IMG/VR virus record: IMGVR_UViG_3300046167_000825
Span: 225,015-289,014 of that record
Length of the DNA: 64,000 nucleotides
Direction: 5' to 3' (one strand)
Shown piece by piece: positions 12,334 through 50,257 of this stretch; positions within the stretch are counted from its first letter, which is position 1, and each line of letters starts with the position of its first letter. Both the position numbers and the translations under genes were made by a program. Under the pieces are notes generated by a model. It did no database searches, was not told the DNA's origin, and saw nothing but the letters and a program-made list of their open reading frames with translations.

Positions 12334-12645
12334 ATGTCAGACAAGAAAGAACATCGTATTTTAATGACCAAGCGACTGGCTAGGCGGTGGGTGTTATCCC
12401 ATATTCGTCCAGAGAGCCGTATTACGGTTTATTATGGTGCAACGGATGTTAGCCGTATCCCTTCTCTTTTGCGTAGTTTCCGAGATGGGAAAGTGAAATT
12501 GACGGGTGTTGATATCAAGATTCCCGATTTGGGTGTTCAAGAACGCTTTGATGCCTTTGAGGTTTGGTCTTCCGATAAAGAGTCTATGATTGTTCTTAAT
12601 AAATGGCTTGAAGATCGTGGATTTCAGACATCGGGAGTTTGGTAA
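12334..12645 (+). CDS. hypothetical late protein with tag-like RLARRWV
   Basis: ORF with RBS after the late motif. Confidence 0.65.
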   Translation: MSDKKEHRILMTKRLARRWVLSHIRPESRITVYYGATDVSRIPSLLRSFRDGKVKLTGVDIKIPDLGVQERFDAFEVWSSDKESMIVLNKWLEDRGFQTSGVW

Positions 12646-13076
12646 TGTCATCACAAAGAATTGAGAGTGCCTTCAAATATAAGTATGTGACGGTAACGGC
12701 AGACACTTATTATTACGAAATTGTGGCAGACACCCAACTTAATATCTCAGTTCGAGATATCGTAGCCCCCAACGGTCAGTTGATAGACTCCATGACACTT
12801 CTCCCAGCAGAAGTTGTTTCTGATATAGCCGCAAGTATTCTTGTGGTGAAAGATTTATTAGGTCTTGCTACTCGTCTTACGGGTGAGGCAGATTTCGTTT
12901 CGGCTACCTCCGTTACGGTGGAGTTCGCAGAAGCCCAGAACTCCACAGATTATTCTGTTCTTCTTGACCCTTCTGTTTTCTTAGATTTTCGTGTCACAGC
13001 GAAAACTACGGTGAGTTTCACTATTGAATCCTCGACAACATATACGGGTTCAGTTCGCTGGTCTTTATTTGTGTAG
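12645..13076 (+). CDS. virion protein with C-terminal beta-sandwich (fibre-tip-like) domain
   Basis: SVTVEF...DYSVLL...VTAKTTVSFTI resembles the C-terminus of the next gene. Confidence 0.5.
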   Translation: MSSQRIESAFKYKYVTVTADTYYYEIVADTQLNISVRDIVAPNGQLIDSMTLLPAEVVSDIAASILVVKDLLGLATRLTGEADFVSATSVTVEFAEAQNSTDYSVLLDPSVFLDFRVTAKTTVSFTIESSTTYTGSVRWSLFV

Positions 13077-13085
13077 GGAGTTGAT

Positions 13086-14282
13086 ATGGGTCAAAGTAAG
13101 TTTTCAAAATTAGATGGGGTGTCGTTCGACCCAGAGAACTACGCCAATACTCAGATAACCATCAATCATGTTGATGGGACATTGGTGTTTCAAGACGAAG
13201 AAATAACCGCTTTGAAACTATCTCAATTGGTGGGCTTCGAGAATATTGATAATGTTTTTCTCGTGGGCAAAACGGGTAGTGGTGCTAGATATAAGACCAT
13301 CCAAGATGCTGTTGATGCAGTTTCCGTGACGAGTTCTTATTTAGAACCGTCTGTTATAATCGTTACGGCTGGTGTTTATCAAGAATCTTTGACTATCCAG
13401 AAGGATGGGCTTCACATTATTGGAATGGGGCGAGTCGCTCTCAAAGGTGACGATGGTTCTCCCTCTGTTTTGATTGATGACTTGGGTGTTGTTATCCCTC
13501 AAGTTCTCCACATAGAAAATCTTATCATTGAGAAAGACCAAGACGGTGAATCTTGTGTCGAAGTATCTGGTTCGTTGGATTCAACTCTCCTTCAAAAAGG
13601 GTTGACTCTTAAAAATTGTTCTTTAGAGGCTACTGGGATTGGGTCATACCCAATCAAAGCCGATAAAGTCAATTCTATCACTGTGCTTGACGGTACTTGG
13701 GGGGCTAGTCGCCTAGACTCCATTTGCTTTATTTCACAAGTGGCATATTTCCATTGTGTTGGTTTGCAACAAGGTACGGCTTTTCAGATGTCTTATGATG
13801 ACTCTGCTGATGCTCCCCTCACAAAAACCTCCGAGTATATTATTTCTAGTATGCTTGGGAGTGGTAACTTCTTGATTTCTTTGTTGGGGACGGGTTCTTT
13901 GACTGTCAACCGTAGCACCATTGGTGATTTATCCATTACGGGAGATAGACTACTGTCAGTGTCGGACAGTAAGACAATGAACCTTACGGTACAAGGGACG
14001 ACAGCGTGTTCTGTGGATGCGACAAAGCATGGGACAATCGGTGGAGATATCACTGCCACTCTTTCCCTCAGTGAACTTAGGGATTCTGTGGATTTAATAG
14101 GAGTGGTCAGCGTTAGCGTGCCGTTGCCTTTGCCTTACCCCAACTCTTTTTATATGGTCAATCTCGATGGCTATGATGGGTCAGCCCCTTATGTCACCAA
14201 TAAGACTACCACGACTTTTGATGTGGTCTTTCCCGATGGGTTGGTTCACACCACAACAGTGCAGTATCAAGTTATTCTTTGA
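13086..14282 (+). CDS. beta-helix (pectinesterase-like) tailspike or virion protein
   Basis: YKTIQDAVDA...IIVTAGVYQESL motif; beta-rich repeats. Confidence 0.6.
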   Translation: MGQSKFSKLDGVSFDPENYANTQITINHVDGTLVFQDEEITALKLSQLVGFENIDNVFLVGKTGSGARYKTIQDAVDAVSVTSSYLEPSVIIVTAGVYQESLTIQKDGLHIIGMGRVALKGDDGSPSVLIDDLGVVIPQVLHIENLIIEKDQDGESCVEVSGSLDSTLLQKGLTLKNCSLEATGIGSYPIKADKVNSITVLDGTWGASRLDSICFISQVAYFHCVGLQQGTAFQMSYDDSADAPLTKTSEYIISSMLGSGNFLISLLGTGSLTVNRSTIGDLSITGDRLLSVSDSKTMNLTVQGTTACSVDATKHGTIGGDITATLSLSELRDSVDLIGVVSVSVPLPLPYPNSFYMVNLDGYDGSAPYVTNKTTTTFDVVFPDGLVHTTTVQYQVIL

Positions 14283-14329
14283 TCGTGGTAATATGCCTAT
14301 ATTTTCAACAAAGATAATAGAGGTGTCTT

Positions 14330-14914: not shown

Positions 14915-14923
14915 GATTGTATA

Positions 14924-21870: not shown

Positions 21871-22170
21871 ATGGGAAGATACAGAGCAAGAAACACAGAC
21901 CCCGTTGAAAGGGATGTTCATAAGAACATAGCCGAAGCCGAGCGTTATCTGAAAAGAGCGTTGTCGGTTCTTTCTTCTGTTCGTGGGAATCCCTCTATAC
22001 GGAAAGCACGGTATAATCAACTAGAGCAAATGCTCCAAGAATCCGTGAAGGTTTTATCTTCTCCTCCTCGATTGACACATGCTCATGATAAAAACGACCC
22101 CGACTTGAATCCAAAGGTCGCAGAGGAACAACGGAAAAAACGAATGGAACGGAAAAGAGGTGATAAATGA
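21871..22170 (+). CDS. basic hypothetical protein
   Basis: ATGA overlap with portal. Confidence 0.6.
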   Translation: MGRYRARNTDPVERDVHKNIAEAERYLKRALSVLSSVRGNPSIRKARYNQLEQMLQESVKVLSSPPRLTHAHDKNDPDLNPKVAEEQRKKRMERKRGDK

Positions 22171-23849
22171 CAAAAAAATCTGGTGTGGCAGTCGGTAAAG
22201 TTCCTTCTCGTGCGAAAGTACACACGGGAAAACCTCGTAAAGTTGTGGCTAGTTCAATGAAAGTTGGTGGGTTACAGACCTATTCTGGTGGCGAAGGGTC
22301 TGGTGGGAACTTCTATTCTCCCGAACTGAGTACCGATTTCCTTGAACTCCCACAGAGTATGCACGAGAGATGGAATTACTTCCGTTTCTTCTATCGTTCA
22401 GAACCTTTCGTGGGTCAAGCGATTGATCTTCACACCGAACTTCCCCTTTCAAAAATCCGTCTGGGTTTCCCGAACTACATCAAAGACAGAGAGATGGCGA
22501 AGGAGGCATTGGACTTCTGTCAGAAGTGGTCTAGGAAAATCGGATTACTTCACCGTTTGATTGAGATCGTCCATGAATACAATCTCATTGGTGAAGTGTT
22601 TATCTTCATGGAAGATGTGACTTCAGACCCACCCGATGATCTTAAATATGAAGTCAGACGAGAACTGCTTGATGATGGGACAGTCCAAGAGGAACTTGTA
22701 GAACGAGAGGATGCCAAAGAACTGCAAGTGAAATGGTTGAAAAAGAACTACAAGGGTTGGACAGCCCTCCGAGTTCTCCCCCCAGAGCAAACCCATGTTC
22801 AATCGTTTCCATTCACGGATGAGAAGATTATTGAACTTATCCCCGATTCTAAAACAAAGGACATTATCTCACAAGCAGATAGTGGTGACCCAACAGCAAA
22901 GCGTATTGTGGACTCCATGCCTAGAGGTGTGGTGGAAGCCGTCCTTGAAGGGAAGAATATCCCCTTGAACACCGATCCAGATGCGGGTTCTTTCGTCTGC
23001 TATCTCGCTCGTAAGAAATCACAGTATGAGGACAGAGGGCATTCCATCCTTGAGAGATGTATCCGAACTCTCGTGTTCCGAGATAAACTTCGTCAAGCCA
23101 ACACTTCTATCGCTTCAAGGCACATGACCCCCATCCGTTTGGTCTATGGTGAAGATATGGATCAAGCCGATGTGGAAGCATTGAGAGAGCAAGTGGATTT
23201 GGCTCTTGCTGATCCCGACTTCTCTATCATAGCGAACTTTGAAATCCGATGGGAGGAAATGGGTTCTGACCAACGCCTCCTTGATCTTGGTTCTGAATAT
23301 GACCTCACTGATCGTCAGTTGTATGCTGGTCTTGGTGTGACAGAAGGCTTACTCTCTGGTGAGAGTTCTTATAGTGGTGACCGTATCAACTTGGAAGTCA
23401 TCAACACGAGGTACATGCTTCTCCGAGAAATCCTACAAGACTTGGTTGAGGAGAAAATGCTCAAACCAATGTGTGCTAGGATGGGTTTCATTGAGGAAGA
23501 TGAATACGGAAATGAACATGTGGTTTATCCCACACTTTCTTTCACAAGACTTGCACTCAGAGATAACAATGACACTTTCGATGCCTTGTTCAATCTCTAT
23601 CAGAAGGGTTCATTGGATGTGGATATCATCTTGGAACTCTTGAACATTGACCCAGTAGCAACCAAAGAGAAACTAGAACGAGATATGTTCACACTCAACG
23701 ATAGTCAGTTCAATGAGGTTCTACGAGGTATCTATGGTGAGGCTGGTCGTGCATTAGCCGAGAACTCAGATGCCCTTGAAAAGATAGCCGAGAATCTAGG
23801 TCTGACCTACGAGAAGCCCGAAGAAGAAGGTGGCGGTGGTAGATTCTGA
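22167..23849 (+). CDS. portal protein
   Basis: 560 aa after terminase; EPFVGQAID, GEVFI, RGHSILE, AGLGV motifs typical of portals. Confidence 0.85.
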   Translation: MTKKSGVAVGKVPSRAKVHTGKPRKVVASSMKVGGLQTYSGGEGSGGNFYSPELSTDFLELPQSMHERWNYFRFFYRSEPFVGQAIDLHTELPLSKIRLGFPNYIKDREMAKEALDFCQKWSRKIGLLHRLIEIVHEYNLIGEVFIFMEDVTSDPPDDLKYEVRRELLDDGTVQEELVEREDAKELQVKWLKKNYKGWTALRVLPPEQTHVQSFPFTDEKIIELIPDSKTKDIISQADSGDPTAKRIVDSMPRGVVEAVLEGKNIPLNTDPDAGSFVCYLARKKSQYEDRGHSILERCIRTLVFRDKLRQANTSIASRHMTPIRLVYGEDMDQADVEALREQVDLALADPDFSIIANFEIRWEEMGSDQRLLDLGSEYDLTDRQLYAGLGVTEGLLSGESSYSGDRINLEVINTRYMLLREILQDLVEEKMLKPMCARMGFIEEDEYGNEHVVYPTLSFTRLALRDNNDTFDALFNLYQKGSLDVDIILELLNIDPVATKEKLERDMFTLNDSQFNEVLRGIYGEAGRALAENSDALEKIAENLGLTYEKPEEEGGGGRF

Positions 23850-25069: not shown

Positions 25070-25119
25070 AATCTCTTTATAGAACTCCTATATCAAACGC
25101 CTTATTGAAGGAAAATCGA

Positions 25120-28050
25120 ATGTATGTCTTTTTGAAAAAAACGTGGAATGGTGCAGTTTATAGTCTCTCTCTGAGAGATGATGCTTTCATTCATTTCACA
25201 CCCCAAAGTAGAGCGAGAGAGATACTTGCCTCTGGTCGGTTACTGTTCAACCCTCCTTATAAGAAGTTTGGGATAGATTCCGTCACAGCCATCTCAACCT
25301 CTTTCGGGAGTGCTGTCGCTGGTGTGCAAACAACACACATTAAAGAAACACCCGATGACCCCATCGTTGCCCTTTGGTTCAAAACGAACACCCTCCCCCC
25401 GAAAATAAACTATCCCGAAGAAGTCTATTGGAGTTCGGACGTGGTTTTCACAAAGGTCAAACTTCTCACCAAGCGGGAGGGTCTCTCTATTCTCAGTCGG
25501 TCTAAGCCCCCAACAAAGGACGACTTCTCAGTGGTGTATGAAGGTTCACCTTCTCATAAACAACTACGGACAGCCAAATACAAGAACAAGAAGACCGTCA
25601 AAGACCAAGACGGGAAAGACATGATCGTCTATGAGTATTCAGACCAGCAGATCAATAAGCGACATAAAGAGAAATCCCAAAAGGTCGAGAAAATCCGTCA
25701 GAATATAAACTCTTTGGAAACGCAAGTTCTCAAAGACCTCAAAAAAGAGGATACCCGTCAAGTAGCACTGGCGGTCGCCCTCATCAATCACACATACGAG
25801 CGTGTAGGGAACGATGATAGTGCTTCCAATGGTCACTATGGGGTAACGGGGTGGAAGAAGAAACATTTGTCTTTCAAGGGAAGCAAAGCCTTCCTCTCAT
25901 ACACGGGTAAGAGTGGTGTTCGTCATAATAAAGAGGTCGATGACAAGGTGTTGGTGTCAGCCCTCCGAGAGATATCGAAAGGTTTGAAAGATGACGATGT
26001 TCTTTTGTCAGACATTAAAGCCCCCGATGTCAATGAGTATCTCAACCAGTATGGGATCACAGCGAAAGACATGCGAGGTTACCATGCCAACAGAGAAATG
26101 CAAGAACGCTTGAAAGCCCTCCGAGAGGAAAGGGGCGAACTACCGAAGGACAAGAAAGAGAAGGACAAGATTCTTAAAGAGGAGTTTAAGGAAGCCCTCA
26201 ATGGAGCAGCGAAAGCCGTTGGTCATGAAGAAGCAACATTAAGAGGGCAGTACTTAGTCCCCCATTTGGAAGATACCTTTATGAAAGATGGCACAGTGAT
26301 AACCACTTTGAAGAAAGCACATATATCAAGAATCGCCACGAGAGTCTTCGGTACAAAAACAGAAAATGAAAAGATGGATGAGGAAGCCGATAGATTGGTG
26401 AAGAAACAACCCAAAAGTAAACCACCTCGCAAAGACCGTCAGCGAAGAAGAATCGACATAGGGGATAAGGACACCACTGAGGACAAGGATTTGAACTCAA
26501 AGGATATGTCGATGAACTACAAGGTGATTGGTGGTTCGTTGGGTGGTGTCATAACGAGAGTTGCTTCTCGTTATATGCTGCTCTCTCGGCTATCCGAGAG
26601 ATATCTGTCAGCGACCACTGAAATTGTGGAAACACCCAATCAAAAAGACACCGATAAGAAGGAAAAAGAGGACAAAAAAAAAGAGTTAGTTCGGAAGAAA
26701 GAAACCGAAGCGTGGGATAAGTTCACGGGGGAAAAAATCAAAGACCCCGAATCCAAAAGAGAAGTTTCGTGGGGTACTTTCCAGAAGAAACACCCCAAAG
26801 ATGCTCAGAAAATCCGTAACAAGTTTCGGACAGACTTTGAGGAATCCTTTAAGGAAGACCAAGTCAATAAAGAAAATGAACAAGCCCAGAAACTAGATAG
26901 ACGGCTCACCGAAGAAGAACTGGCAGAAGTTGATAATATGGTGGAGGAGGTGGTTAACCTCAATGGGCGTGAGATACGCCTCCCATTCGACACAGATGAC
27001 CGTGTTCGTAGTGTTTCGATGGCTCTTGAAGAACCAAAAAGAGATGATGAAACTGTTGAGGACTACAACTCTCGTAAGGCAGAAGAGATTTCTAAGTCTA
27101 TTAGAGGGATGGATACCAAAGCCCTCCAGCAGTTGTGGGATAGTGGGATGATTGATAAGAGTGACCCTCGTGTCAATGATGCGATAGATACCATGATGTC
27201 TATGGATGCAATGGGGGATGTTGTGGGTCGTCCTTTATCGGAGTCTGAAGCCAAAGCCATAGAAGATTTCTATTCTGCTATGCTGACGGAAACCATTAAG
27301 GTCGAGCATTTTGGTAGCGATAAAGAGGAAGGGAAGAGTTTCATTGCTGATTTCGTGGAGGGAGCGAAGAACTCAGCAGTGGAGGCTCTTAAAGAATCTG
27401 AGGATGCCGATTTAGGTGCAGTCATGAAAGATTATCTGTCTAATGCTACGACCAACAAGGAAAAGAAGACACTCAAAATCCACCACATCACAAAAGAGTT
27501 CATGTCAAAGGAACAGAAGGAGGCATTGAAAAGCCTAGAAGAATCTCAGAAGAAAGTGGAGTCCATTCGGAAAGAGAAGCAAACCCAAATGGATCAACTA
27601 TCCGAGATTGATAAAACTCTCTCGACTGAAGATATCAGTGATGAGGACAGAGAACAACTAGAAACGGATAAGGCTTCCCTTCAAAAGAGTGTTGATAGCC
27701 AAGAGGGGCTTCTGAAATCTGAGATGGAAAATCAACAATCCCTCACAGAAAAAACACAACCTAGTTCAGAGAACTTACAGAAGGCACTGGATAAAATGAT
27801 TCAGAAACTCCCAAAAGAAATCCAAAAAGAATATAAGGATTTCGGGAACACAGAGGAAATGATTGAAAAGGTCTTTGAACTCACTCAAGCAGAAGCCTTG
27901 AAGAAGTATGAGGAGATAATTGAAAACTCTAGCATGCCCCCCGAAGAAAAAAAGAAAGCCCTAGAAAGAGCCAAAGACCCTAATTTTGATCCAGAGGGAG
28001 CGTTGGCTGGTATGATGTCAGAGAGTGACGACATCGAAAATGAGATATAA
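25120..28050 (+). CDS. multi-domain protein: ART-like N-terminal domain + DNA topoisomerase IB core + tag motifs + charged coiled coil
   Basis: Topo IB catalytic residues ERVGN, GKSG, KDMR, VGH, QYL; N-terminal HFT..RA.EIL.SG.L. Confidence 0.8.
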   Translation: MYVFLKKTWNGAVYSLSLRDDAFIHFTPQSRAREILASGRLLFNPPYKKFGIDSVTAISTSFGSAVAGVQTTHIKETPDDPIVALWFKTNTLPPKINYPEEVYWSSDVVFTKVKLLTKREGLSILSRSKPPTKDDFSVVYEGSPSHKQLRTAKYKNKKTVKDQDGKDMIVYEYSDQQINKRHKEKSQKVEKIRQNINSLETQVLKDLKKEDTRQVALAVALINHTYERVGNDDSASNGHYGVTGWKKKHLSFKGSKAFLSYTGKSGVRHNKEVDDKVLVSALREISKGLKDDDVLLSDIKAPDVNEYLNQYGITAKDMRGYHANREMQERLKALREERGELPKDKKEKDKILKEEFKEALNGAAKAVGHEEATLRGQYLVPHLEDTFMKDGTVITTLKKAHISRIATRVFGTKTENEKMDEEADRLVKKQPKSKPPRKDRQRRRIDIGDKDTTEDKDLNSKDMSMNYKVIGGSLGGVITRVASRYMLLSRLSERYLSATTEIVETPNQKDTDKKEKEDKKKELVRKKETEAWDKFTGEKIKDPESKREVSWGTFQKKHPKDAQKIRNKFRTDFEESFKEDQVNKENEQAQKLDRRLTEEELAEVDNMVEEVVNLNGREIRLPFDTDDRVRSVSMALEEPKRDDETVEDYNSRKAEEISKSIRGMDTKALQQLWDSGMIDKSDPRVNDAIDTMMSMDAMGDVVGRPLSESEAKAIEDFYSAMLTETIKVEHFGSDKEEGKSFIADFVEGAKNSAVEALKESEDADLGAVMKDYLSNATTNKEKKTLKIHHITKEFMSKEQKEALKSLEESQKKVESIRKEKQTQMDQLSEIDKTLSTEDISDEDREQLETDKASLQKSVDSQEGLLKSEMENQQSLTEKTQPSSENLQKALDKMIQKLPKEIQKEYKDFGNTEEMIEKVFELTQAEALKKYEEIIENSSMPPEEKKKALERAKDPNFDPEGALAGMMSESDDIENEI

Positions 28051-28173
28051 TCTCATGTCTCATTCAAAATATATTCAAACAAAATAAATAATCATTCTAT
28101 ATCAAACACTATATTGTCGATAGCCCTCAGAGGGGTTCTTATGACAATTTTATCTTATTGGGAGGCTTATACC

Positions 28174-28839
28174 ATGAAAAAATTCGCTACACGGGCAATT
28201 GTTGCTGATCTAGACAACCTTGCTGATCTTTTCCAAAACGCTGGTTCTGAACTCGGTGTTCCAACTCGTATCGCTATGGATTTCGCATATCGTTGTGACC
28301 TTTTGTCTGATGTCATCGAAAAATTGGCTGGTGACGAAGAAGCAGAAGAGGAAGAGGAAGAAGAAGAAGTAAAAGAAGAAGAAACTGAACTAGAAAAGAA
28401 GGCTTTTGCTGCATTACAAACTTTATCTCGTCTTGCTTCTGAAGAAGAAGAAAAGGAAGAAGAGAAGGAAGAAGAGAAGGAAGAAGAAGCAGAAGAAGAG
28501 GCAAAGGAATCTTCTAAAAAGGCTACTTTGAAAGAACTTTCTCGTTTAATCAATCGTCTTGCTGGCGATGATGAAGAAAGCGAAGAAGAAGAAAAGGAAG
28601 AAGAAGCAGAAGAGGAAAAGGAAGAAGCAAAAAAAGAGGCTCGTCAAATAACAAAACGCCAAGCCCTTGCTACCCTTCTTCGTATTGCTGAAGAAGAAGA
28701 AAAAGAACTGGGACAACAAGAGGATCAAGCCCTTGAAACTGAAACTGATGAGCCTTATATGAAGGGCTTTTCTGAAGGTTCAAAGGATGTAGCCGAGGTT
28801 GCTAAGGCTGCTGCGACTTACCGTAAACGTCTTAAGTAA
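28174..28839 (+). CDS. Glu-rich prohead core or scaffold-like protein
   Basis: Poly-E tracts alternating with amphipathic helices ending in [KR]xA. Confidence 0.65.
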   Translation: MKKFATRAIVADLDNLADLFQNAGSELGVPTRIAMDFAYRCDLLSDVIEKLAGDEEAEEEEEEEEVKEEETELEKKAFAALQTLSRLASEEEEKEEEKEEEKEEEAEEEAKESSKKATLKELSRLINRLAGDDEESEEEEKEEEAEEEKEEAKKEARQITKRQALATLLRIAEEEEKELGQQEDQALETETDEPYMKGFSEGSKDVAEVAKAAATYRKRLK

Positions 28840-28852
28840 AAAGAGGTCTCCC

Positions 28853-29437
28853 TTGAAGAAACAATCTGCAAGATATGATCTTCTCGCTGAGGAGTTGTCC
28901 GTTGGGGATGCTGTCATCCCCATCGGTCAGCCCATTGGTGGTGTTGGTCGAATTACGAAAATCTATGTCGGCATTGGCATGGCAGATGTTCAATTCAATG
29001 GGGGTAATCGTAGGATTCCCGTTGAGGACTTGAAGTTTGTTGCTGAGGAGGGATATTCTTTTGCTCCCGATCACGACACAACTGCTGGTGGAGAGATTGA
29101 TGAAGAACCCTTTGGTTCTCGTGAACTCTCAGTTCAACCACCTCATGAGGCTTTCACACCCGTGTTGAATGATATGTTCTATGAACAGACTCTTCCAACA
29201 AAGGTCGCCCAACGCTTTGTGAAAAAAGCATTGTATTGGGCTGGTCGTGATCGTAAATATCGAGCCACGAGATCCGAGTGTGGTGCTTCCTATCTATGTC
29301 CAAAGTGTGTAGACCCCATTGTGATGAAGAAAGCCATCTACAAACGGTTAGAGGGTGCTTCCGAGCGTCTGTGGGGTTGCCCCTCTTGTATGTTCTTAAT
29401 CAAGGACACTGACATTGTGCGTTGGGGGGGTGAATAA
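28853..29437 (+). CDS. SH3-like + zinc-ribbon protein with KVAQRFV tag
   Basis: TTG start after GAGG; CPKC...CPSC. Confidence 0.6.
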   Translation: MKKQSARYDLLAEELSVGDAVIPIGQPIGGVGRITKIYVGIGMADVQFNGGNRRIPVEDLKFVAEEGYSFAPDHDTTAGGEIDEEPFGSRELSVQPPHEAFTPVLNDMFYEQTLPTKVAQRFVKKALYWAGRDRKYRATRSECGASYLCPKCVDPIVMKKAIYKRLEGASERLWGCPSCMFLIKDTDIVRWGGE

Positions 29438-30849
29438 TGGCATTTATGAAATATGCTTCTGCTCTTGTGGTTTCTCCCGAAGCCAATCAAAGAACTTGGG
29501 GTGGTGTTCGCACTGCCTCTAGTAATACAGCCAATCTGGTTGGTCAAGCCGAGAAGATTTTCGGTGGGAAGTTCAATCCCTCTGATTATCTTTTAACACA
29601 TTGTACTATTGTGGCTTCTGTTGATACAGATGATGCTCCCAATGTAAAACTCGGTTCTGTCACTGAGAATGGTAAGAAGATCAATCGTAAGTATTCTAAC
29701 TATCTCATAACTCCTTCGACATCTAAGTATGTGAATAACAACGGAGATTCTTGGGATCGTGATGTTCTGTTGAAGTCTTATCAAACATTTGTTGGTAGTC
29801 ATAACTTCCAAGAGCATGTTCAGATTGAGGACTTGTCGAAGGGTCGTATCATTGATGCCGTTGCTCGTGATGTCGGGGAATCTATTTATGTGGATATCCT
29901 AGTTGCGACAGACCGTAAGCACGCCCAGTTGGTTGAAGATATCCAGAGTGGTCGTTTAGGCACATTGTCTATGGGATGTACAGTCGATAGCACCATTTGC
30001 ACCAAGTGTGGGAATGTGGCAGTCGATGACACTGAGTTCTGTGACCATGTGAAGTATGAAAAACGAAACACTTTTATTGATAACAGTGGCAAGAAAAGAA
30101 TAGTGGCTGAGTTGTGTGGTCATACCGATATGGGCGACACGGCTGGAGTGACATTCATAGAAGCCTCTTGGGTTGCTGTACCCGCCTTTACTGGTGCAGT
30201 AATGCGAAATATTTTAACGGCAGACGAGGTTAGTTCGGATGTAGTTCGTAAAGCGAACGAGATTCTTTCAGTGCCTCCAGCCGAATGGTCAGACGAAGCC
30301 CAAAAGAAAGTCGCACGGAATGTGGTGTCTTTCGGTTTCGATGACGAAGAAGAAGATGAGGGTGGCGATAGCGAACCCACATCCCCTATTGATGAATTAG
30401 AAGATGAGATGGTATCAATGGTGAAGAAACGAGTTCTTCAACGGCTTAAATCCGAAATGTCCCCCAAAGAGGAGGCAAAGAAAGATGCACCAAAGCCCGA
30501 AGATAGTACCACTTATCAAAATGATACAGTGATCAAAGAAGGCACACTAAGAAAGGCTCACGCTATGGGTCAAAAACTTGGTGTTCTTCAAGGGATCGCA
30601 AAGGTTTCTCACACCAGAGAAGATTTTATTGATGGTATTGCTCTCCTTGATTATGAGAGGGGTTCAAAAACATCGGTATCTGTTTATCGTGCCAGCCTAA
30701 AGGTCGGTTCGGTATCAAAGTACGCCACACTGAAAGGTTTCTTGCTTGCTAGTAAGAAGGCTCTCGGTGGTACGATGACTAAATCTGAGGTTACTCAGAT
30801 GATTCGACTCGCTCGATTGCTTGACTTTTGGTCAGCACAAAAACATTAA
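29437..30849 (+). CDS. prohead maturation protease
   Basis: H(N)FQEH, LSMGC, FIEASWVAVPA motifs; located before scaffold and capsid genes. Confidence 0.75.
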   Translation: MAFMKYASALVVSPEANQRTWGGVRTASSNTANLVGQAEKIFGGKFNPSDYLLTHCTIVASVDTDDAPNVKLGSVTENGKKINRKYSNYLITPSTSKYVNNNGDSWDRDVLLKSYQTFVGSHNFQEHVQIEDLSKGRIIDAVARDVGESIYVDILVATDRKHAQLVEDIQSGRLGTLSMGCTVDSTICTKCGNVAVDDTEFCDHVKYEKRNTFIDNSGKKRIVAELCGHTDMGDTAGVTFIEASWVAVPAFTGAVMRNILTADEVSSDVVRKANEILSVPPAEWSDEAQKKVARNVVSFGFDDEEEDEGGDSEPTSPIDELEDEMVSMVKKRVLQRLKSEMSPKEEAKKDAPKPEDSTTYQNDTVIKEGTLRKAHAMGQKLGVLQGIAKVSHTREDFIDGIALLDYERGSKTSVSVYRASLKVGSVSKYATLKGFLLASKKALGGTMTKSEVTQMIRLARLLDFWSAQKH

Positions 30850-32124: not shown

Positions 32125-32775
32125 ATGGCTTTACTTGGACAAGCGAGTGGTGCGTTTACAGAAAGTTCTTCATCTTTACGGATTCTACATGTTGGTATCC
32201 GAAACACTGTCGGTGTTATTACAGATGAGGCTTTCGAGCAAACTAACCCTCCCGTACTTTCTGCATCTGGTGCTGGATCTACCATCTCAGATCAAGTATC
32301 TACAACAATCTTCGGAGTTCTCTCTGGATCTGTTGCTTTCACTCGACCAGACATTGACGAAAATGTAATCGGTGGCCCAGCGGCTACTGCTGCTTTGTTG
32401 CTTTCTGCTGGATGTCGACCACTTGGTGTATTCATTAACCACGCTGCTGGATATTCTTTCGAGAACACACCCGCGGCTGCTTCTAACAAGTGTCCTTATG
32501 TTTCTGCACAAGGTTGCTATGCAAACTCTTTGTTTGAAACCAACATTATCACTAATGGTGGAACTACTGGTACTGCCGTTGCTGCTGTTGCTACTGTACC
32601 AGTTACTGCTTATGCTGCTGGACAAAACTTGGTTGCTTCTGTTAATGGTTACTTGACCAACGAAGCCGCTGACGGATATGAAGCGACACAAGGTGGAACT
32701 AATACTATTATCGGAATCGTGAAGATGGCCCCAGATAATACTCAAGATGAACTCGTTTACGACCAACGCATTTAA
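32125..32775 (+). CDS. capsid decoration/cement protein
   Basis: A/G/T-rich, directly upstream of MCP, highly biased codons. Confidence 0.65.
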   Translation: MALLGQASGAFTESSSSLRILHVGIRNTVGVITDEAFEQTNPPVLSASGAGSTISDQVSTTIFGVLSGSVAFTRPDIDENVIGGPAATAALLLSAGCRPLGVFINHAAGYSFENTPAAASNKCPYVSAQGCYANSLFETNIITNGGTTGTAVAAVATVPVTAYAAGQNLVASVNGYLTNEAADGYEATQGGTNTIIGIVKMAPDNTQDELVYDQRI

Positions 32776-32788
32776 GGAGGAGACTACT

Positions 32789-33658
32789 ATGAGCGTATCA
32801 AATGCTGTGAAGCAAAAAATCATTTCTGATTATATCAAGACTCCTCAAGGGCGTGCGAAACTTGCAGCGTCTATGACTCAACCATTACGTTTGCGTAGAG
32901 ATTACGCATCGGTTGGTCGTAAGACATTTCTTGTTGAACAACTGCCAGACGGAGCGTTGCCAATTTATGACAAAGATCCAGATGTAACTGCGTATGTGGT
33001 TGGTGAAGAAGGACAAAACATCCTTGCAATCACTAAGCCAAGACGTGTTATCTTTCCTTTGTTTGAGATTGCATCTAACCCCGAAATCCCTTTGACACAA
33101 ATCAAAGAAAGACGATTCGACCTTATTGAGCGTGCTCAAGATTTGGCTCGTGCCCAAATCCAAGCGGCAGAAGATGAGCGAGTATTCTCTACTCTTGATG
33201 CTGTTGCTCAGAACGGTTTCGATTCTGTTGGAAACCAAAACCCAGACATCCCAGTTGTTGCTCCAGTTACTGGTGCAGTCCTTGCTGATGCTTTTGCGTT
33301 AATCGAACGCCATGACCTTCGTGTTGCACGAATCTTCATGAACGCTCGTGACTATGCAGATTTGCGTAAGTTCGGTCGTGACATCTTGGATATCGAATCT
33401 CAGCGTGACTTGTTGAAGACTGGTCTTATGGCTACTCTTTGGGGTGCTCAGATCATCACTTCTCGTATCGTTCCCGTTGGAACAGTATATGTTGCTTGTG
33501 AGCCAGAGTTCTTTGGTCGCATGCCAGTTCGTACTGAGTTGACTGTATTGTCTGCTGATGATCCAAAGGCTCGTACTATTGGGTTCTCTGTATTCGAGAA
33601 TATCGGTATCGGTTGTTTCAATCCTCGTGGATTGGTTCGATTGTCTATCACTCGATAA
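32789..33658 (+). CDS. major capsid protein (HK97 fold)
   Basis: AGGAGG RBS, strong codon bias; IQAAEDERVF, IFMNARDYADL, LWGAQII motifs; followed by a terminator. Confidence 0.88.
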   Translation: MSVSNAVKQKIISDYIKTPQGRAKLAASMTQPLRLRRDYASVGRKTFLVEQLPDGALPIYDKDPDVTAYVVGEEGQNILAITKPRRVIFPLFEIASNPEIPLTQIKERRFDLIERAQDLARAQIQAAEDERVFSTLDAVAQNGFDSVGNQNPDIPVVAPVTGAVLADAFALIERHDLRVARIFMNARDYADLRKFGRDILDIESQRDLLKTGLMATLWGAQIITSRIVPVGTVYVACEPEFFGRMPVRTELTVLSADDPKARTIGFSVFENIGIGCFNPRGLVRLSITR

Positions 33659-40137: not shown

Positions 40138-40524
40138 ATGAAGAAAAAAGCAACAAGTTCCTACGCTTCTTGGGCGTTATTAAGTGAGGGTGTTTCCTCT
40201 GCGAGAGTTGAAGCCTATCGGTTAAGACACCTCGTCAATCGTGCTATGGCTCTCATTGAGCAATCTGTTGCCAAAGACCATCTGTATCAAGTGGCTGGAG
40301 ATATCATTATGGGTGTGCCTTCCCGTCTTGATAGGATAGAACAAACACTTGATAGAACTTCTTACGCTTTAGCGAAGATGGGGGATGCTCATCTCAAACA
40401 ACGCCTTCCTATCCACGATAGAGAAATGGTGGAAGAAAGTATCCAACGGGCTGACTTATTGAATCCGTCTTTTTCAAAGATGTCTTCTAATGTCGCTCAA
40501 AGATTCTTGGATACCGATAAATGA
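40138..40524 (+). CDS. probable internal head protein (C-terminal NVAQRFL tag)
   Basis: MKKKA start; late motif at 40082. Confidence 0.65.
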   Translation: MKKKATSSYASWALLSEGVSSARVEAYRLRHLVNRAMALIEQSVAKDHLYQVAGDIIMGVPSRLDRIEQTLDRTSYALAKMGDAHLKQRLPIHDREMVEESIQRADLLNPSFSKMSSNVAQRFLDTDK

Positions 40525-41537
40525 AAAAAGAAGCCCTTTCTAAATTACCCAGCGAACTGTCGGGTCAGAGAACCTTTGTACGGGATGAATCTAGTCGTGG
40601 GACACCCACAGACACAGATAGAACCCCTCAGAGTGTCTTGCCTCCCGATAAGGCGACACCTCGTTCTCCTTCTCGTGAAGATAGTAATAAGAAAGACAAT
40701 GTTTCTCATCTCGGCCCCACTTATTTCAATGTTCCCGATGGGACAGCCAAAGAAATCAAGCATAGGACTGTTCCAGCAGAGGGTGAGCAGTATGGGCATC
40801 CTTATCAGAATGGAGTGAATACTCTCAGACATCGTGTCGATCAGCGAACTGGCTCAGAGGAACTAGCCGAATCTATTGAAGCCATCTCCGATGTTTATCT
40901 CGGAGAGTTTGACGAACTAGATGACGACTTTGATGATGAAGGACTCACAGCCGAAGAAATAGAGGCGACTTCTCGGAGATGGAAAGGGAAACGCAGACCA
41001 TCAAAAGGTCGTGTGAGAACACGCCCTAGAAATGTCCGAACTAGATCAAAAAGATTGAGAAATCGTTCGAGAGGCAACAAAAGAAACAAGTATCAATACA
41101 ACTCCAAAACTAAGAAAGTAGAGAGAGTTAAACGGAAGCCGAAAGAGATACTCAATCGTCAGAAATATGACAGAGATTATAATCGAAGACAACGGAAACG
41201 GAATCCATCCACTCGAAAAAGACAGAGAGGATATTACAAAAAGAGAGCCACTGATATGAACTTGGAAGCAATACAAAGTGTGATGGCAGACATGGGTTTG
41301 TACGAAATCCGACCACCGAAGACAGACGAGTTGTATGTCCCAAGTGGTGTGCCTTACTCCCCCTCTGGTGGGAATGGCTATTGGAAAAGAGACCTCCCCA
41401 ATAGAAACCGAAAGCCCAGTGAGAGGCAAGACACCTCAAGAGAGCCGTCAGACATCGGAAACTCATCGAGAGTCGTACCTCAAGGGCAGTATGTCAAAGC
41501 GAGTATACGAGTGGCTTATCGCTTCTTGAATGGGTGA
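40521..41537 (+). CDS. probable internal head protein with acidic and Arg/Lys-rich blocks (C-terminal RVAYRFL tag)
   Basis: MKKEA start; protamine-like block. Confidence 0.7.
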   Translation: MKKEALSKLPSELSGQRTFVRDESSRGTPTDTDRTPQSVLPPDKATPRSPSREDSNKKDNVSHLGPTYFNVPDGTAKEIKHRTVPAEGEQYGHPYQNGVNTLRHRVDQRTGSEELAESIEAISDVYLGEFDELDDDFDDEGLTAEEIEATSRRWKGKRRPSKGRVRTRPRNVRTRSKRLRNRSRGNKRNKYQYNSKTKKVERVKRKPKEILNRQKYDRDYNRRQRKRNPSTRKRQRGYYKKRATDMNLEAIQSVMADMGLYEIRPPKTDELYVPSGVPYSPSGGNGYWKRDLPNRNRKPSERQDTSREPSDIGNSSRVVPQGQYVKASIRVAYRFLNG

Positions 41538-41896: not shown

Positions 41897-41963
41897 GAAT
41901 CTCAAGGTAGCCTTTTTACCACGAACGGTATAGTAGAATATATCTTTGAAACTCGGTGGAAGA

Positions 41964-43163: not shown

Positions 43164-43251
43164 TCGATCTTCAGTCGTTCTTTTATATGACGACCCAATA
43201 TGGAGAGAGAGGGGTTTGCCCAAATCTTTTTTATTCCATACAGAGGTGTTT

Positions 43252-44566: not shown

Positions 44567-44958
44567 AAATCGCTAAAACCATCCCAGAAATCCTATCTCA
44601 AACCGACAAGAAGATTCTTGGTCGTGCTAGGGGTGTGAATCCAACACTCAAGGGTCAAGAGGGGAAAGTGGTTCAGTATGAGGTGAAGGGTTCAAAGGCT
44701 TACACTATTGATGTGGAGTTTCGAGGAAATCATGTGAAGGTTCGGTGTTCGTGTGATGCTTTTGTTTTTCAAGGGAGTGAATATCACGCCAACAAGCAAA
44801 AGTTTCTGTATGGCAAAGCGAAGGGGAACTTAGCCGAACCCACTAAGCGTGACCCAGAGGGAAAGAACTTGGTATGTAAGCATATCGTGGCAGTATTTGA
44901 TAACATTGTGGGTAGTAGTATACAGCGAGTCGCTTCTCGTTATTTGTTTGATACTTAA
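44563..44958 (+). CDS. SWIM-type zinc-finger protein with C-terminal RVASRYL tag
   Basis: CSC.AF...CKH. Confidence 0.72.
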   Translation: MKIAKTIPEILSQTDKKILGRARGVNPTLKGQEGKVVQYEVKGSKAYTIDVEFRGNHVKVRCSCDAFVFQGSEYHANKQKFLYGKAKGNLAEPTKRDPEGKNLVCKHIVAVFDNIVGSSIQRVASRYLFDT

Positions 44959-46680: not shown

Positions 46681-46693
46681 TTAGGAGAATCCA

Positions 46694-48137: not shown

Positions 48138-48719
48138 TCATTGAAGTCCTTTAATAAAATCTTTCAATGCCGTGAGGTCTCCTCCTTCGACCCCCGTCCA
48201 AAGGAAACCATGCCCCCCAGCCTTGTTCCATTCTTTTATGGTGGTGTGGTGATCATCAATCAATACGGCATTGGGCTTACAGAAAGAAACCTTCTCAGAA
48301 CGAGGAACGACATTAACAACAGCCTCCGACCCCAACACCTCACGGACATATCTCGTCTTGTCCTCCTCAGCATACATACCAATGGGAGCAGTGAGAAACT
48401 CATAATAGAAGCCACTGTTCCTCACCCAATCCCATAGCCCATTGTGTTCCATTGTTGGGAGGTCGTAGAACCACCCCTCTTGACACCCTATCTTATAGAG
48501 TAGGGGTAAGACTACTTTATGATTTAACTCGTCTTTCTGGAGGGGGTAAGCCTTTCCGAAGACCTCAATGTATTTCCGTAATCCTTTCTTGAGGCTCTTG
48601 CTTTCAAGGGCTTCCATCTCTGTGTCGGTAAGGGTCGCCAGTCGTTTAATCTCTGTGACCATAGCCAAGCCAAAGTCACAGACACAGCCATCCATATCTT
48701 GATAAATTGTGATAGACAT
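48138..48719 (-). CDS. HAD-family 5'(3')-deoxyribonucleotidase-like protein
   Basis: DMDGCVCDF, FLTAP, K, LIDD motifs; AGGAGG RBS. Confidence 0.82.
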   Translation of the reverse strand: MSITIYQDMDGCVCDFGLAMVTEIKRLATLTDTEMEALESKSLKKGLRKYIEVFGKAYPLQKDELNHKVVLPLLYKIGCQEGWFYDLPTMEHNGLWDWVRNSGFYYEFLTAPIGMYAEEDKTRYVREVLGSEAVVNVVPRSEKVSFCKPNAVLIDDHHTTIKEWNKAGGHGFLWTGVEGGDLTALKDFIKGLQ

Positions 48720-48877
48720 AAAAAATCCTCCTTTGTTTGTCCAAATCATATACGGAAAAAACTACTTCAATCAACCGTAATCTAAAACACTTTACCACCC
48801 CCATTAAAATAGGAATCTCTTCCCAATTCCCATGAATCCTTTTATATTCCTATTTCAATAGGAACAAGGAGATAGAC

Positions 48878-49318
48878 ATGGGGAACTCAAGCATTCGTGT
48901 GGCATATAGATATTTGACAGCACGAGGGAAAGCCAAGAAAGATGTTGGACACGGTGGGTTAGACGAATGGTTTTCTGGTCATGGCACTGGGAAGAACAAG
49001 AGTGAGGGTGAAGCCACTTGGGGTGATTGGGTGTCAATATCTCCCGTAGATAAAACCATAGAGAAAGAAGACGGCACAAAGAAGAAGATACAGAAAGGGG
49101 ATATCGTGGGGGACTGTGGTATCAGCAAAGACCCCGAATGGAAAGACACCACCAACAATGGCAAATCACCCTTGAAGTGTATGCCTCGTCAGAAAGCCCA
49201 CAAGATGGATAAGAAGGAAAGAGCCGAACTAGCCAAAGGGAAGCAGAAAGCAGAGAAGGGGAGCAAAGGGAAGAAACCCGTGAACACCCCCACTTTCAAG
49301 AAAGAAGATAAGAAGTAA
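48878..49318 (+). CDS. basic probable internal head protein with N-terminal RVAYRYL tag
   Basis: GGLDEWF...WVSI...CG...KCMP. Confidence 0.7.
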   Translation: MGNSSIRVAYRYLTARGKAKKDVGHGGLDEWFSGHGTGKNKSEGEATWGDWVSISPVDKTIEKEDGTKKKIQKGDIVGDCGISKDPEWKDTTNNGKSPLKCMPRQKAHKMDKKERAELAKGKQKAEKGSKGKKPVNTPTFKKEDKK

Positions 49319-49321
49319 ATA

Positions 49322-50257
49322 TTACTTCCACCCCCCACCGAGTTCTTTGTATTTCGCCAAAGCCCACCCATTGGCGTAGGCTGAAGGATACTTGTTGAAG
49401 CCTTTACCCTCATTGGGGGCATTGACGGTTTTCCCACCTTCAGTGACCGACTTCAGTTCGCCCTTCGCCATCTGAATCATTTTATCCCACAGTTTCTGAT
49501 TGGTCGCTTCTGGTTTCTTTTCTTTCGACACCAAGAATCTGTAAGCAACTCGGACAGAGGCTTGTTTAACTTTGGGAGTGGCTTCCTTTGCGACCTTCTC
49601 TCTTGTTTTCAACCACTTGACTCCTTGTTGGAGATCCGTGAAGAAAATCCTATCCTTTCGCAGTAAACCTCTCGATTTTTTTGCTCTTATCTCAACATTC
49701 TCAAACTTCCGACCCGTCCATTCCCAAAGGTATTGGTTGCTCACAACAAGTTGGCGGGTGACCCTTCCATTCTCCCACACGGGGAGGCGAATAGATATGC
49801 TCCCTCCAGTTTTCTTGGCTTTCGCTTTGGATTTCATGATGGCATCTTTGTTGGATTTCTTCCATGCTTTGTACTTGGAGTTCGCTGAAGAAGAACTAAG
49901 TGCTGGATCATGACCCCAGTTCCGTAAAGATATCTCCCATTTGGACATCCCCGTGCTACCAACGGGTTGTCCGATTTTCCCACCGAGCATTCTCCCATTG
50001 AAACCATTCTCTTGGGCTGCATTATCAAAGTCGACATCTGACCACTCTTTAACGGGCTTTGATTTCCGTCTCTTGATACGATGAAGGGAATCCAAACCAC
50101 TTTGAATACCACCCTCATCTTTCGCTTTCGCTCTATTGAGAGAAGCCTCCAAACGGGCTGGGTTCTTCGCCCACTCATCGAGAGCATCTTGACTCATATT
50201 GATAAGCCCTTTCCATTTGTCGTATATCTCTTTTTTCTCTTTGTCAGATCGTGCCAT
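49322..50257 (-). CDS. multi-domain basic protein: DUF3140-like + RVAYRFL tag + DUF5872-like
   Basis: INMS...SLRNWGHDP; C-terminal PSAYANGWALAKYKELGGGW. Confidence 0.65.
   Translation of the reverse strand: MARSDKEKKEIYDKWKGLINMSQDALDEWAKNPARLEASLNRAKAKDEGGIQSGLDSLHRIKRRKSKPVKEWSDVDFDNAAQENGFNGRMLGGKIGQPVGSTGMSKWEISLRNWGHDPALSSSSANSKYKAWKKSNKDAIMKSKAKAKKTGGSISIRLPVWENGRVTRQLVVSNQYLWEWTGRKFENVEIRAKKSRGLLRKDRIFFTDLQQGVKWLKTREKVAKEATPKVKQASVRVAYRFLVSKEKKPEATNQKLWDKMIQMAKGELKSVTEGGKTVNAPNEGKGFNKYPSAYANGWALAKYKELGGGWK

What the first reader, a model, noticed from the sequence alone, without database searches (positions are those of the whole stretch)
12373..49552. A portable peptide tag RVAxR[FY]L on unrelated late proteins: candidate capsid-targeting signal
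Seen: RVAYRYL (48896-48916, N-terminus), RVAYRFL (41508-41528, C-terminus), RVAYRFL (49532-49552, minus strand, internal), RVASRYL (44926-44946, C-terminus of a SWIM protein), RVASRYM plus RLSERYL and RIATRVF (26329-26607, after the topoisomerase IB core), NVAQRFL (40489-40509, C-terminus), KVAQRFV (29201-29221) and the weaker RLARRWV (12373-12393). The carriers are otherwise non-homologous, the tag can be N-terminal, internal or C-terminal, and the codons differ, so conservation is at the peptide level. All carriers are downstream of the late motif. I did not see the tag in replication proteins, and the early-type SWIM protein at 24228 lacks it. Established: T4 internal proteins carry an N-terminal capsid-targeting sequence that gp21 removes. 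Inference: this is an analogous but position-independent amphipathic basic helix that docks cargo on the acidic core/scaffold for packaging and injection.
Basis: partly seen in the sequence, partly recalled or inferred. Interest (0 to 1): 0.88.

Follow-up and report, generated by a model that had tools for sequence, protein, structure and literature searches.

The report
Shared peptide tag on jumbo-phage proteins
Six otherwise unrelated proteins of an uncultivated 289-kb marine jumbo phage share a short conserved helix-forming peptide, [A/S]-S-x-R-V-A-x-R-[Y/F]-L, that relatives keep even when protein modules are reshuffled; it is most likely an address label that loads cargo proteins into the assembling phage head.

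Summary
All listed peptides are at the stated coordinates. The strict motif RVAxR[FY]L occurs 4 times in about 20,400 residues, against 0.0016 expected. It lies only in real ORFs, uses different codons, and its carriers show no similarity once the tag is masked.

- **Solid carriers (six):** A 48878-49318, B 40521-41537, C 49322-50257(-), D 44563-44958, E 25105-28050, F 40138-40524.
- **Weaker instances:** KVAQRFV (G) is marginal. RLARRWV and RIATRVF are not supported. RLSERYL is plausible only as a tandem second copy.
- **Relatives:** related phages keep the tag in orthologs and in about 25 of 110 homologs of C, at N-termini, C-termini and domain junctions. When modules are redistributed, each product examined keeps a tag.
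- **Context:** E is a topoisomerase-IB protein encoded between portal and prohead protease. Its orthologs are multi-enzyme "polyvalent" proteins, with tags after their mapped domains.
- **Structure:** AlphaFold models the tag in C as an isolated helix between disordered linkers.
- **Replication proteins** in the window lack it.
- **Side finding:** a second motif, [KR]-x-A-S, is enriched in scaffold and head-module proteins in two genomes. It often abuts the tag and may be the protease site.

Capsid targeting is the best reading (about 0.5) but is inferred; no partner was identified. This would be a new variant of a known kind.

The parts
48887..48916 (+). Tag of carrier A (SSIRVAYRYL, residues 4-13 of the 146-aa protein 48878-49318); N-terminal
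   Evidence: The L040 ortholog keeps it. In L045 the same module has the tag internally, after a SOD domain.
41499..41528 (+). Tag of carrier B (ASIRVAYRFL, residues 327-336 of the 338-aa protein 40521-41537); C-terminal. B is Arg/Lys-rich, low-complexity, pI 10.2.
   Evidence: Conserved in the L040 and L045 orthologs.
49532..49561 (-). Tag of carrier C (ASVRVAYRFL, residues 233-242 of the 311-aa protein 49322-50257); internal, between folded modules
   Evidence: AlphaFold models an isolated helix at 233-243 (block pLDDT 51-61) after a linker with pLDDT below 50. About 25 of 110 homologs carry the tag.
44914..44946 (+). Tag of carrier D (SSIQRVASRYL, residues 118-128 of the 131-aa SWIM-like protein 44563-44958); C-terminal
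   Evidence: Conserved in L040 and L045.
26557..26607 (+). Tag of carrier E (RVASRYM, residues 485-491) plus a possible tandem second copy, RLSERYL. It follows the topoisomerase-IB core (residues 169-401) and a charged linker in the 981-aa protein 25105-28050.
   Evidence: Orthologous tags sit after the TopIB core in L025/L017, L016, L012, L021 and LR745208.1.
40480..40509 (+). Tag of carrier F (MSSNVAQRFL, residues 115-124 of the 128-aa protein 40138-40524); C-terminal
   Evidence: Conserved in L040 and L045. The LR745208.1 ortholog has SRVAKRFL at the same place, but internal because of a C-terminal extension.
29201..29221 (+). Marginal, possibly ancestral tag-like helix KVAQRFV in G (28799-29437). 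G has an SH3-like barrel, a linker, this helix and a zinc ribbon, and is encoded just upstream of the protease in the relatives compared.
   Evidence: 'RVA' is conserved in orthologs; the rest is not.
29437..30849 (+). Prohead maturation protease (470 aa); candidate processor of tagged proteins
   Evidence: phrog_18299 and phrog_2774; orthologs in 22 viral contigs; alignment.
30883..31911 (+). Acidic scaffold-like protein (pI 4.2) with five [KR]-x-A-S sites; candidate partner and protease substrate
28114..28839 (+). Acidic Glu-rich head-module protein (pI 4.4); candidate prohead-core component
32747..33658 (+). HK97-fold major capsid protein. It is 77-94% identical across the fetched relatives and 40% identical to Bacillus phage G gp27.
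22167..23849 (+). Portal protein
   Evidence: phrog_16240.

Best explanation
The tag is a clade-specific short linear motif: a Ser-capped, basic amphipathic helix of about 10 residues, [AS]-S-x(0-1)-R-V-A-x-R-[YF]-L, held on flexible Lys-rich or charged linkers.

Proposed mechanism (inferred):
- The tag docks otherwise unrelated proteins onto one common partner inside the assembling prohead. The partner would be the acidic scaffold/core, another core protein such as G, or the inner face of the shell.
- Those proteins are thereby enclosed with the DNA and delivered to the next host.
- The cargo consists of DNA- and RNA-directed enzymes and very basic DNA-associated proteins.
- The prohead protease probably then trims or releases them at adjacent [KR]-x-[AS]-S sites.

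Shown here: the motif is real, portable, under selection, exposed and helical, and is retained per polypeptide.

Inferred, not shown: the partner, the packaging and the cleavage.
For: 1. Non-chance, peptide-level conservation on non-homologous proteins.
2. Orthologs of A, B, C, D and F in L040 and L045 keep the tag. A more distant phage (L043) has four tagged proteins in 20 kb. LR745208.1 keeps it on the F and TopIB orthologs and has several N-terminally tagged proteins. There the tag HMM gives 7 hits at or above 5.8 bits, against 1 in the shuffled genome.
3. Module shuffling keeps one tag per product. The arrangements seen are [tag]-Amodule, [SOD]-[tag]-Amodule, Amodule-[tag]-[C-terminal module] and [N-domain]-[tag]-stop.
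4. Head context. E (TopIB) and G lie between portal and protease in the relatives compared. E's orthologs are polyvalent proteins: PolyA_pol+PAP2+TopIB, HAD_SAK_1+TopIB, and TopIB+InPase. Tags sit directly after the mapped TopIB and InPase domains of L021, and a tag-like RVA element follows PAP2 in L016. Iyer et al. 2017 (PMC5512222) predict that such phage proteins are packaged and injected.
5. A, B and C have pI about 10. The neighbouring scaffold-like proteins have pI 4.2-4.4.
6. AlphaFold shows the tag in C as an isolated helix between disordered linkers and two confident modules.
7. [KR]-x-A-S is enriched in scaffold and head-module proteins in the window. Genome-wide in LR745208.1, the four most enriched of 611 ORFs are all head-module proteins. 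Many tags are immediately preceded by K-x-[AS]-S.
8. Replication proteins in the window lack the tag, and their orthologs in LR745208.1 are not among the tag HMM hits.
Against: - There are no virion proteomics for this phage or any tagged relative, and no partner was identified.
- B, F, D, A and C are encoded among non-structural genes (cytosine methylase, HNH nucleases, aldolase), not in the head module.
- Phage G, the nearest well-studied relative by capsid protein, has no TopIB, no G-like protein and no tag in its head module.
- The major capsid protein is 77-94% identical across the fetched relatives, whereas tag usage and sequence vary. This argues against the shell itself as the receptor.
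- N-terminal tags such as A's are not followed by an obvious [KR]-x-A-S site, so the release step is unclear.
- In LR745208.1 the tags are not preceded by that site.
Confidence: 0.5

Rival explanations
1. The tag docks its carriers onto a shared hub that is not part of the virion, for example a DNA-bound factor, the phage sliding clamp, a transcription complex or a host protein. On this reading its job is to concentrate DNA- and RNA-acting proteins on phage or host nucleic acid during infection.
For: - Many carriers look nucleic-acid related: TopIB, a SWIM finger, Arg/Lys-rich proteins and, as a borderline hit, an RNA ligase in LR745208.1.
- Most carriers lie outside the head module.
- The phage encodes its own clamp and clamp loader.
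- Short terminal or internal peptides are typical of hub-binding motifs (established knowledge).
Against: - The tag does not fit the known clamp-binding consensus patterns (the PIP box and the bacterial beta-clamp pentapeptide), compared by eye.
- The clamp loader, primase, nucleases and sigma factor in the window do not carry it, and their LR745208.1 orthologs are not among the tag hits.
- E and G sit inside the head-assembly operon next to protease and scaffold.
Confidence: 0.2
2. The motif is mainly the recognition or cleavage signal of the prohead protease (or another phage peptidase). On this reading it marks where polyproteins and precursors are cut, rather than being an address label.
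For: - In polyvalent proteins and in the C family the tag lies at domain junctions.
- RVAS itself fits [KR]-x-A-S, which is enriched in scaffold and head proteins in two genomes.
- The scaffold site KKASRL resembles RVASRYL.
- In herpesviruses, assemblin cuts at Ala|Ser just before the capsid-binding tail of the scaffold (PMC4498786).
Against: - A cut 2-12 residues from a terminus, as in A, B, D and F, has little purpose unless the removed or retained peptide has a function of its own.
- The most conserved positions (R-[YF]-L, and Tyr at x) are absent from the scaffold sites.
- One tag is kept per polypeptide even in single-module proteins.
- This reading also places the carriers in the prohead, so it overlaps with the main explanation.
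Confidence: 0.15
3. The tag is a generic amphipathic helix that acts without a dedicated receptor. It might self-associate (tag-tag bundles that co-assemble carriers), bind membrane or bind DNA.
For: - Predicted amphipathic helix with two Arg residues and an aromatic residue.
- Tandem copies occur in several proteins and could form hairpins.
- The flanks are rich in Lys.
Against: - Seven near-invariant positions over large divergence indicate specific recognition, not bulk physico-chemistry.
- Other lineages of the C family carry different but equally fixed versions at the same junction. That pattern fits co-evolution with a partner.
Confidence: 0.1

Closest known systems
T4 capsid-targeting sequence (CTS) of internal proteins IPI-III and Alt, and the N-terminal packaging signal of P1 DarB
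   Same: Both are short peptides shared by otherwise diverse proteins. In T4 the signal directs proteins into the scaffolding core, so that they are packaged and injected, and it is transferable to foreign proteins (PMC3012670; PMC9024508). As in T4, the cargo here looks like counter-defence or early-acting proteins, and basic cargo sits beside an acidic scaffold.
   Different: The T4 and P1 signals are N-terminal; this tag is N-terminal, C-terminal or internal. No sequence or family relationship was found (no Pfam or PHROG hits for the carriers). Packaging is untested here.
Herpesvirus and phage scaffold C-terminal capsid-binding tail with an adjacent maturation (M) site
   Same: A short terminal segment docks onto the capsid protein and is separated from the rest of the protein by the assemblin-type protease, which cuts at Ala|Ser next to it (PMC4498786). 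Here many tags are preceded by K-x-[AS]-S, and that motif is enriched in the scaffold-like protein.
   Different: In herpesviruses the tail belongs to the scaffold and protease only, not to a set of unrelated cargo proteins. Cleavage and binding have not been shown here.
Encapsulin cargo-loading (targeting) peptides and microcompartment encapsulation peptides
   Same: Both are portable terminal peptides on unrelated cargo enzymes. They bind the interior of a protein shell; encapsulin shells are HK97-fold like this capsid (PMC8229669 and PMC10960027, listed).
   Different: The sequence is different. Those systems have no DNA, no protease and no injection. The tag here also occurs internally and in multiple copies within polyproteins.
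Phage polyvalent proteins (Iyer et al. 2017)
   Same: E's orthologs combine TopIB with PolyA_pol, PAP2, HAD_SAK_1 or InPase domains and are encoded among virion genes. This matches the class predicted to be packaged and injected.
   Different: That work describes domain architectures and embedded peptidases. A shared inter-domain peptide tag was not among the passages I retrieved from the paper (a term search only). The MuF and portal fusions typical of that class were not detected here.

Membership tests
T4-type capsid-targeting sequence | Located at the extreme N-terminus of the precursor | tested here: not met
   Only A (residues 4-13) is N-terminal. B, D and F are C-terminal; C and E are internal.
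T4-type capsid-targeting sequence | Followed by a prohead-protease cleavage site that removes it after assembly | tested here: inconclusive
   A candidate site, [KR]-x-[AS]-S, abuts many tags and is enriched in head proteins. It lies on the N-terminal side of the helix, and no cleavage data exist.
T4-type capsid-targeting sequence | Necessary and sufficient to package a foreign protein into the head | not testable with these tools
   Needs a tag-reporter packaging assay.
T4-type capsid-targeting sequence | Carriers homologous to T4 internal proteins or Alt | tested here: not met
   No Pfam, PHROG or NCBIfam family is shared with T4 internal proteins.
Encapsulin-type cargo-loading peptide | Short portable peptide on unrelated cargo proteins | tested here: met
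Encapsulin-type cargo-loading peptide | Binds a pocket on the inner face of an HK97-fold shell protein | not testable with these tools
   The capsid protein is HK97-like. No complex prediction or binding assay was possible.
Phage polyvalent protein (for carrier E) | Several unrelated enzymatic domains in one polypeptide, encoded among virion genes | tested here: met
   Orthologs: L016 has PolyA_pol+PAP2+TopIB, L022 has HAD_SAK_1+TopIB, L021 has TopIB+InPase, all between portal and protease. In the window's E only TopIB is recognisable.
Sliding-clamp-binding peptide | Matches a clamp-binding consensus and is present on replisome proteins | tested here: not met
   The pattern differs from the known consensus motifs (by eye). 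Clamp loader, primase and nucleases in the window lack the tag, and their LR745208.1 orthologs are not among the tag hits. The DNA polymerase of the window phage lies outside the window.
Type IB topoisomerase (core of carrier E) | Sequence similarity to the catalytic core of solved TopIB structures or to Pfam Topoisom_I | tested here: met
   PDB 2h7f E=8e-6 and 2f4q E=2e-4 over residues 167-401. Orthologs hit PF01028 at 1e-24 to 1e-29. Catalytic residues were not checked.

The most novel reading that the evidence does not exclude
A lineage of marine jumbo phages uses a position-independent, 10-residue cargo-loading helix. Any protein module that carries it, at either end or between domains, would be enclosed in the prohead. 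A built-in [KR]-x-[AS]|S protease site would then release it. New injected effectors could evolve simply by recombining modules at the tag, with the tag sequence co-evolving with its receptor from lineage to lineage.
Probability: 0.35. Interest if true: 0.8.

Novelty: new variant of a known kind. Interest (0 to 1): 0.62.

Why it matters
How jumbo phages choose the many proteins they enclose and inject with their DNA is largely unknown outside T4, P1 and the phiKZ/SPN3US group. A short, transferable signal that works at any position would:
- explain how diverse counter-defence enzymes are recruited;
- show how new injected proteins evolve by module shuffling;
- let the injected proteome of uncultivated phages be predicted from sequence;
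- offer a simple handle for packaging foreign proteins in phage capsids.

The companion [KR]-x-A-S motif, if it is the protease site, would define the specificity of a prohead-protease lineage that has not been characterised.

Tried and rejected
- **Megablast of 20 kb against GenBank phages:** no match.
- **Family searches on the carriers (Pfam, PHROGs, NCBIfam):** nothing beyond a weak SWIM hit and the TopIB match to solved structures.
- **Whole-collection DNA scan for the back-translated tag:** the tool needs 14 fixed bases, so only one codon-restricted pattern could be run. It found only this phage's own contigs. The remaining 225 kb of the genome could not be fetched, so a full early-versus-late test was not possible.
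- **tblastn of A and C against cultured phages:** essentially nothing.
- **Foldseek of the C model against the PDB:** no significant match.
- **Sequence search of the protease against the PDB:** none.
- **Phage G head module:** no tag.
- **Promoter box in LR745208.1:** not recognisable.
- **A-like module inside E:** rejected, because the alignment is gappy and misses the conserved residues.
- **Complex prediction of tag plus candidate partners:** not possible with the structure tool, which takes single natural chains only.
- **DNA-level repeat or recombination signal:** rejected, because the codons differ.

Full report
**What the window is**

The window is the last 64 kb of a 289,014-bp viral contig, IMGVR_UViG_3300046167_000825. 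It has no nucleotide match among GenBank phages.

Its major capsid protein (32747-33658) is HK97-like. It is 86% identical to that of an uncultured 485-kb phage (LR745208.1), 49% to Tunturiibacter phage Tunturi_5 and 40% to Bacillus phage G gp27.

The gene order includes:
- a replication block: SbcCD-like proteins, an exonuclease, sliding clamp 5424-6569, primase, clamp loader and a sigma factor;
- a head module: large terminase 19750-21588, portal 22167-23849, carrier E 25105-28050, an acidic protein 28114-28839, G 28799-29437, prohead protease 29437-30849, an acidic scaffold-like protein 30883-31911, ORF 32125-32775 and the capsid protein;
- a mixed region with a cytosine methylase, HNH nucleases, an aldolase and small unknown proteins;
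- a giant ORF from 55885 to the end of the contig.

Yes.

RVAxR[FY]L occurs four times in 20,388 residues. The analytic expectation is 0.0016, and none of 2000 shuffles gave more than one. With RVASRYM there are five hits, all in long ORFs and none in the other frames.

The motif is longer than reported: [AS]-S-x(0-1)-R-V-A-x-R-[YF]-L. Codons for Arg, Val and Ala differ among copies, so it is not a DNA repeat.

An unbiased all-against-all 9-mer comparison recovers the tag as the best matches between non-homologous proteins. After masking the tag, the carriers show no significant similarity.

A tag HMM separates six carriers (A-F, 10-21 bits) from G (4.2 bits; the shuffle maximum is 2.7) and from noise. 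RIATRVF scores below shuffle level, and RLARRWV and RLSERYL are not among the listed hits.

**Conservation elsewhere**

- In closely related marine contigs (L040, L045) the orthologs of A, B, C, D and F all keep the tag.
- A more distant phage (L043) has four tagged proteins within 20 kb, one with a tandem copy.
- Of 110 homologs of C in the large protein collection, about 25 carry the tag. They include nearly all of the closest ones. The tag lies at residues 6-7, at the C-terminus, or between the conserved N-domain and varied C-terminal modules.
- More distant members of that family have different but equally fixed Ser-capped amphipathic segments at the same junction. This is the pattern expected if a peptide co-evolves with a partner.
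- The TopIB protein E has the tag after its core and a charged linker. The same arrangement is found in L025/L017, L016, L012, L021 and LR745208.1, although the linkers have diverged.
- LR745208.1 was read in full. The tag HMM gives seven hits at or above 5.8 bits, against one in a shuffled copy. Several are at N-termini.

**What the anatomy says**

Modules are redistributed around the tag. The window has [tag]-Amodule. L045 has [SOD]-[tag]-Amodule. L043 has Amodule-[tag]-[C-terminal module of C] and [N-domain]-[tag]-stop. Every product keeps a tag.

The TopIB orthologs are polyvalent proteins: PolyA_pol+PAP2+TopIB, HAD_SAK_1+TopIB, and TopIB+InPase. In L021, tags sit directly after the mapped TopIB and InPase domains, and in L016 a tag-like RVA element follows PAP2.

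AlphaFold models C (mean pLDDT 86) as three confident modules. The tag forms an isolated helix at 233-243 (block pLDDT 51-61), preceded by a linker with pLDDT below 50. In G the tag-like segment is likewise a helix after a disordered linker, at low confidence.

As a helix, the two Arg residues fall on one face and Ile/Val, Ala, Tyr/Phe and Leu on the other. This is my reading of the sequence.

Over 36 instances, 5 are N-terminal, 14 are C-terminal and 17 are internal. Lys dominates at position -5 and Ser at positions -2 and -3.

**How it most likely works**

The best-supported reading is a docking peptide for one common partner. The partner is probably in the assembling prohead, so that tagged proteins are enclosed and later delivered with the DNA.

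The support is indirect:
- E and G lie inside the portal-protease-scaffold operon in the relatives compared.
- E belongs to a class predicted to be packaged and injected (PMC5512222).
- A, B and C have pI about 10, beside two proteins of pI 4.2-4.4.
- The modules attached to the tag are the sort of early-acting or counter-defence enzymes that T4 and P1 deliver as internal proteins: TopIB, SOD, InPase, a phosphatase, a nucleotidyltransferase and, as a borderline hit, an RNA ligase (PMC3012670; PMC9024508).
- Replication proteins in the window lack the tag, and their LR745208.1 orthologs are not among the tag hits.
- TCTATATC-like boxes precede E, the 28114-G-protease-scaffold operon, C and the giant ORF. 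Looser variants precede A and F/B. This suggests co-expression, but promoter function is untested.

**A second motif**

[KR]-x-A-S is over-represented, after correcting for composition, in three window proteins:
- the scaffold-like protein (5 sites against 0.27 expected);
- 15559-17631 (7 against 0.66);
- 14330-14914 (3 against 0.19).

The sites sit at conserved positions in scaffold orthologs.

The motif was defined on the window and then tested genome-wide in LR745208.1. The four most enriched of 611 ORFs are the scaffold ortholog, the 15559 ortholog, the protease and the acidic-protein ortholog. The capsid and portal proteins have none.

I infer that this is the cleavage motif of the prohead protease. 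Many tags in the window clade are immediately preceded by K-x-[AS]-S, and RVAS itself fits the motif. This recalls the herpesvirus scaffold, where assemblin cuts at Ala|Ser just before the capsid-binding tail (PMC4498786). It is an analogy and a hypothesis. LR745208.1 tags lack the adjacent site.

**Rivals**

- A non-virion hub, such as the clamp, a DNA-bound factor or a host protein, fits the nucleic-acid flavour of the carriers and their scattered genes. It does not fit the head-module position of E and G or the absence of the tag from replisome proteins.
- A pure protease signal fits the junction positions. It does not explain tags a few residues from a terminus, or the conserved R-[YF]-L.
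- A generic amphipathic helix (self-association, membrane or DNA binding) is hard to reconcile with seven near-invariant positions.

**Comparison and novelty**

Functionally the closest systems are:
- the T4 and P1 capsid-targeting sequences;
- scaffold C-terminal docking tails;
- encapsulin targeting peptides.

The tag is not a member of the T4 class. It is not restricted to the N-terminus, and the carriers are unrelated to T4 internal proteins. My term search of the polyvalent-protein paper retrieved no mention of such a tag. I rate it a new variant of a known kind, with function unproven.

**Limits**

The other 225 kb of this genome could not be read. No complex prediction was possible. No virion proteome exists for any tag-using phage.

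Noticed in passing
window 30883-31911, 15559-17631, 14330-14914; LR745208.1 398709-399974, 414658-416499, 399992-401413, 403543-404175: The motif [KR]-x-A-S is strongly enriched, after composition correction, in scaffold-like and other head-module proteins, at conserved positions in scaffold orthologs. In the complete LR745208.1 genome the four most enriched of 611 ORFs are all head-module proteins. It is a candidate cleavage motif of the prohead protease.
   Followed up: partly
window 25105-28050; L016:3123-8261, L022:5208-8972, L021:1699-8088: A type IB topoisomerase is encoded between portal and prohead protease. In relatives it is embedded in 1255-2130-aa polyvalent proteins with PolyA_pol, PAP2, HAD_SAK_1 or InPase domains, which suggests a virion-delivered DNA/RNA-repair toolkit.
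   Followed up: partly
window 55885-64000 (runs off the contig end): A giant ORF of more than 2705 aa has no Pfam or PHROG hit. Syntenic ORFs of 3321-3505 aa occur in L040, L041, L042 and L045. It is preceded by two TCTATATC boxes.
   Followed up: no
window 25088, 28096, 46300, 50293(-), 55848, 55876; variants near 40090, 46078, 48840: The box TCTATATC (variant TATATTCC) lies almost only in intergenic DNA, 10-65 nt upstream of starts. These include E, the acidic-G-protease-scaffold operon, C and the giant ORF. It is a candidate phage promoter, possibly used with the phage sigma factor at 11688-12296.
   Followed up: partly
P0018-P0104 (homologs of window 49322-50257); L047, L048: The conserved N-domain of C (DUF3140-like, PF11338 on some members) is fused in other jumbo phages to C45/AAT hydrolase, SWIM, cupin or PF18905 modules. 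Each lineage has its own fixed Ser-capped segment at the junction. Other recurrent short motifs seen: LE-x-RVA-x-LE on two N-termini in L047, and IKLAYHNP-x-x-R on two neighbouring proteins in L048.
   Followed up: partly
L045:10703-11881(-): A superoxide dismutase domain is fused, through the tag, to the A module.
   Followed up: no
window 206-1123, 2171-3013, 41946-43163: Three paralogous C5-cytosine DNA methyltransferases share the GSPCQ motif.
   Followed up: no
window 52690-53973 and 53970-55469: Two tandem paralogous HNH/homing-endonuclease-like proteins carry DUF4379 zinc fingers. A further HNH protein is at 43216-43785.
   Followed up: no
window 32747-33658 compared with the rest of the head module: The capsid protein is 77-94% identical across the fetched relatives, whereas their protease, scaffold and G proteins are only about 40-65% identical. 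This is an unusually strong constraint on the shell.
   Followed up: no
window 35401-38121: Residues 128-254 of this 906-aa protein resemble (42-44% identity) a PA5oct-group protein annotated 'structural protein'. This is the only link to that jumbo-phage group.
   Followed up: no
window 12334-12645: The N-terminal segment K-R-L-A-R-R-W-V is conserved in the LR745208.1 ortholog (K-S-V-A-G-R-W-L), but it does not score as a tag. The gene directly follows the sigma-factor gene.
   Followed up: partly
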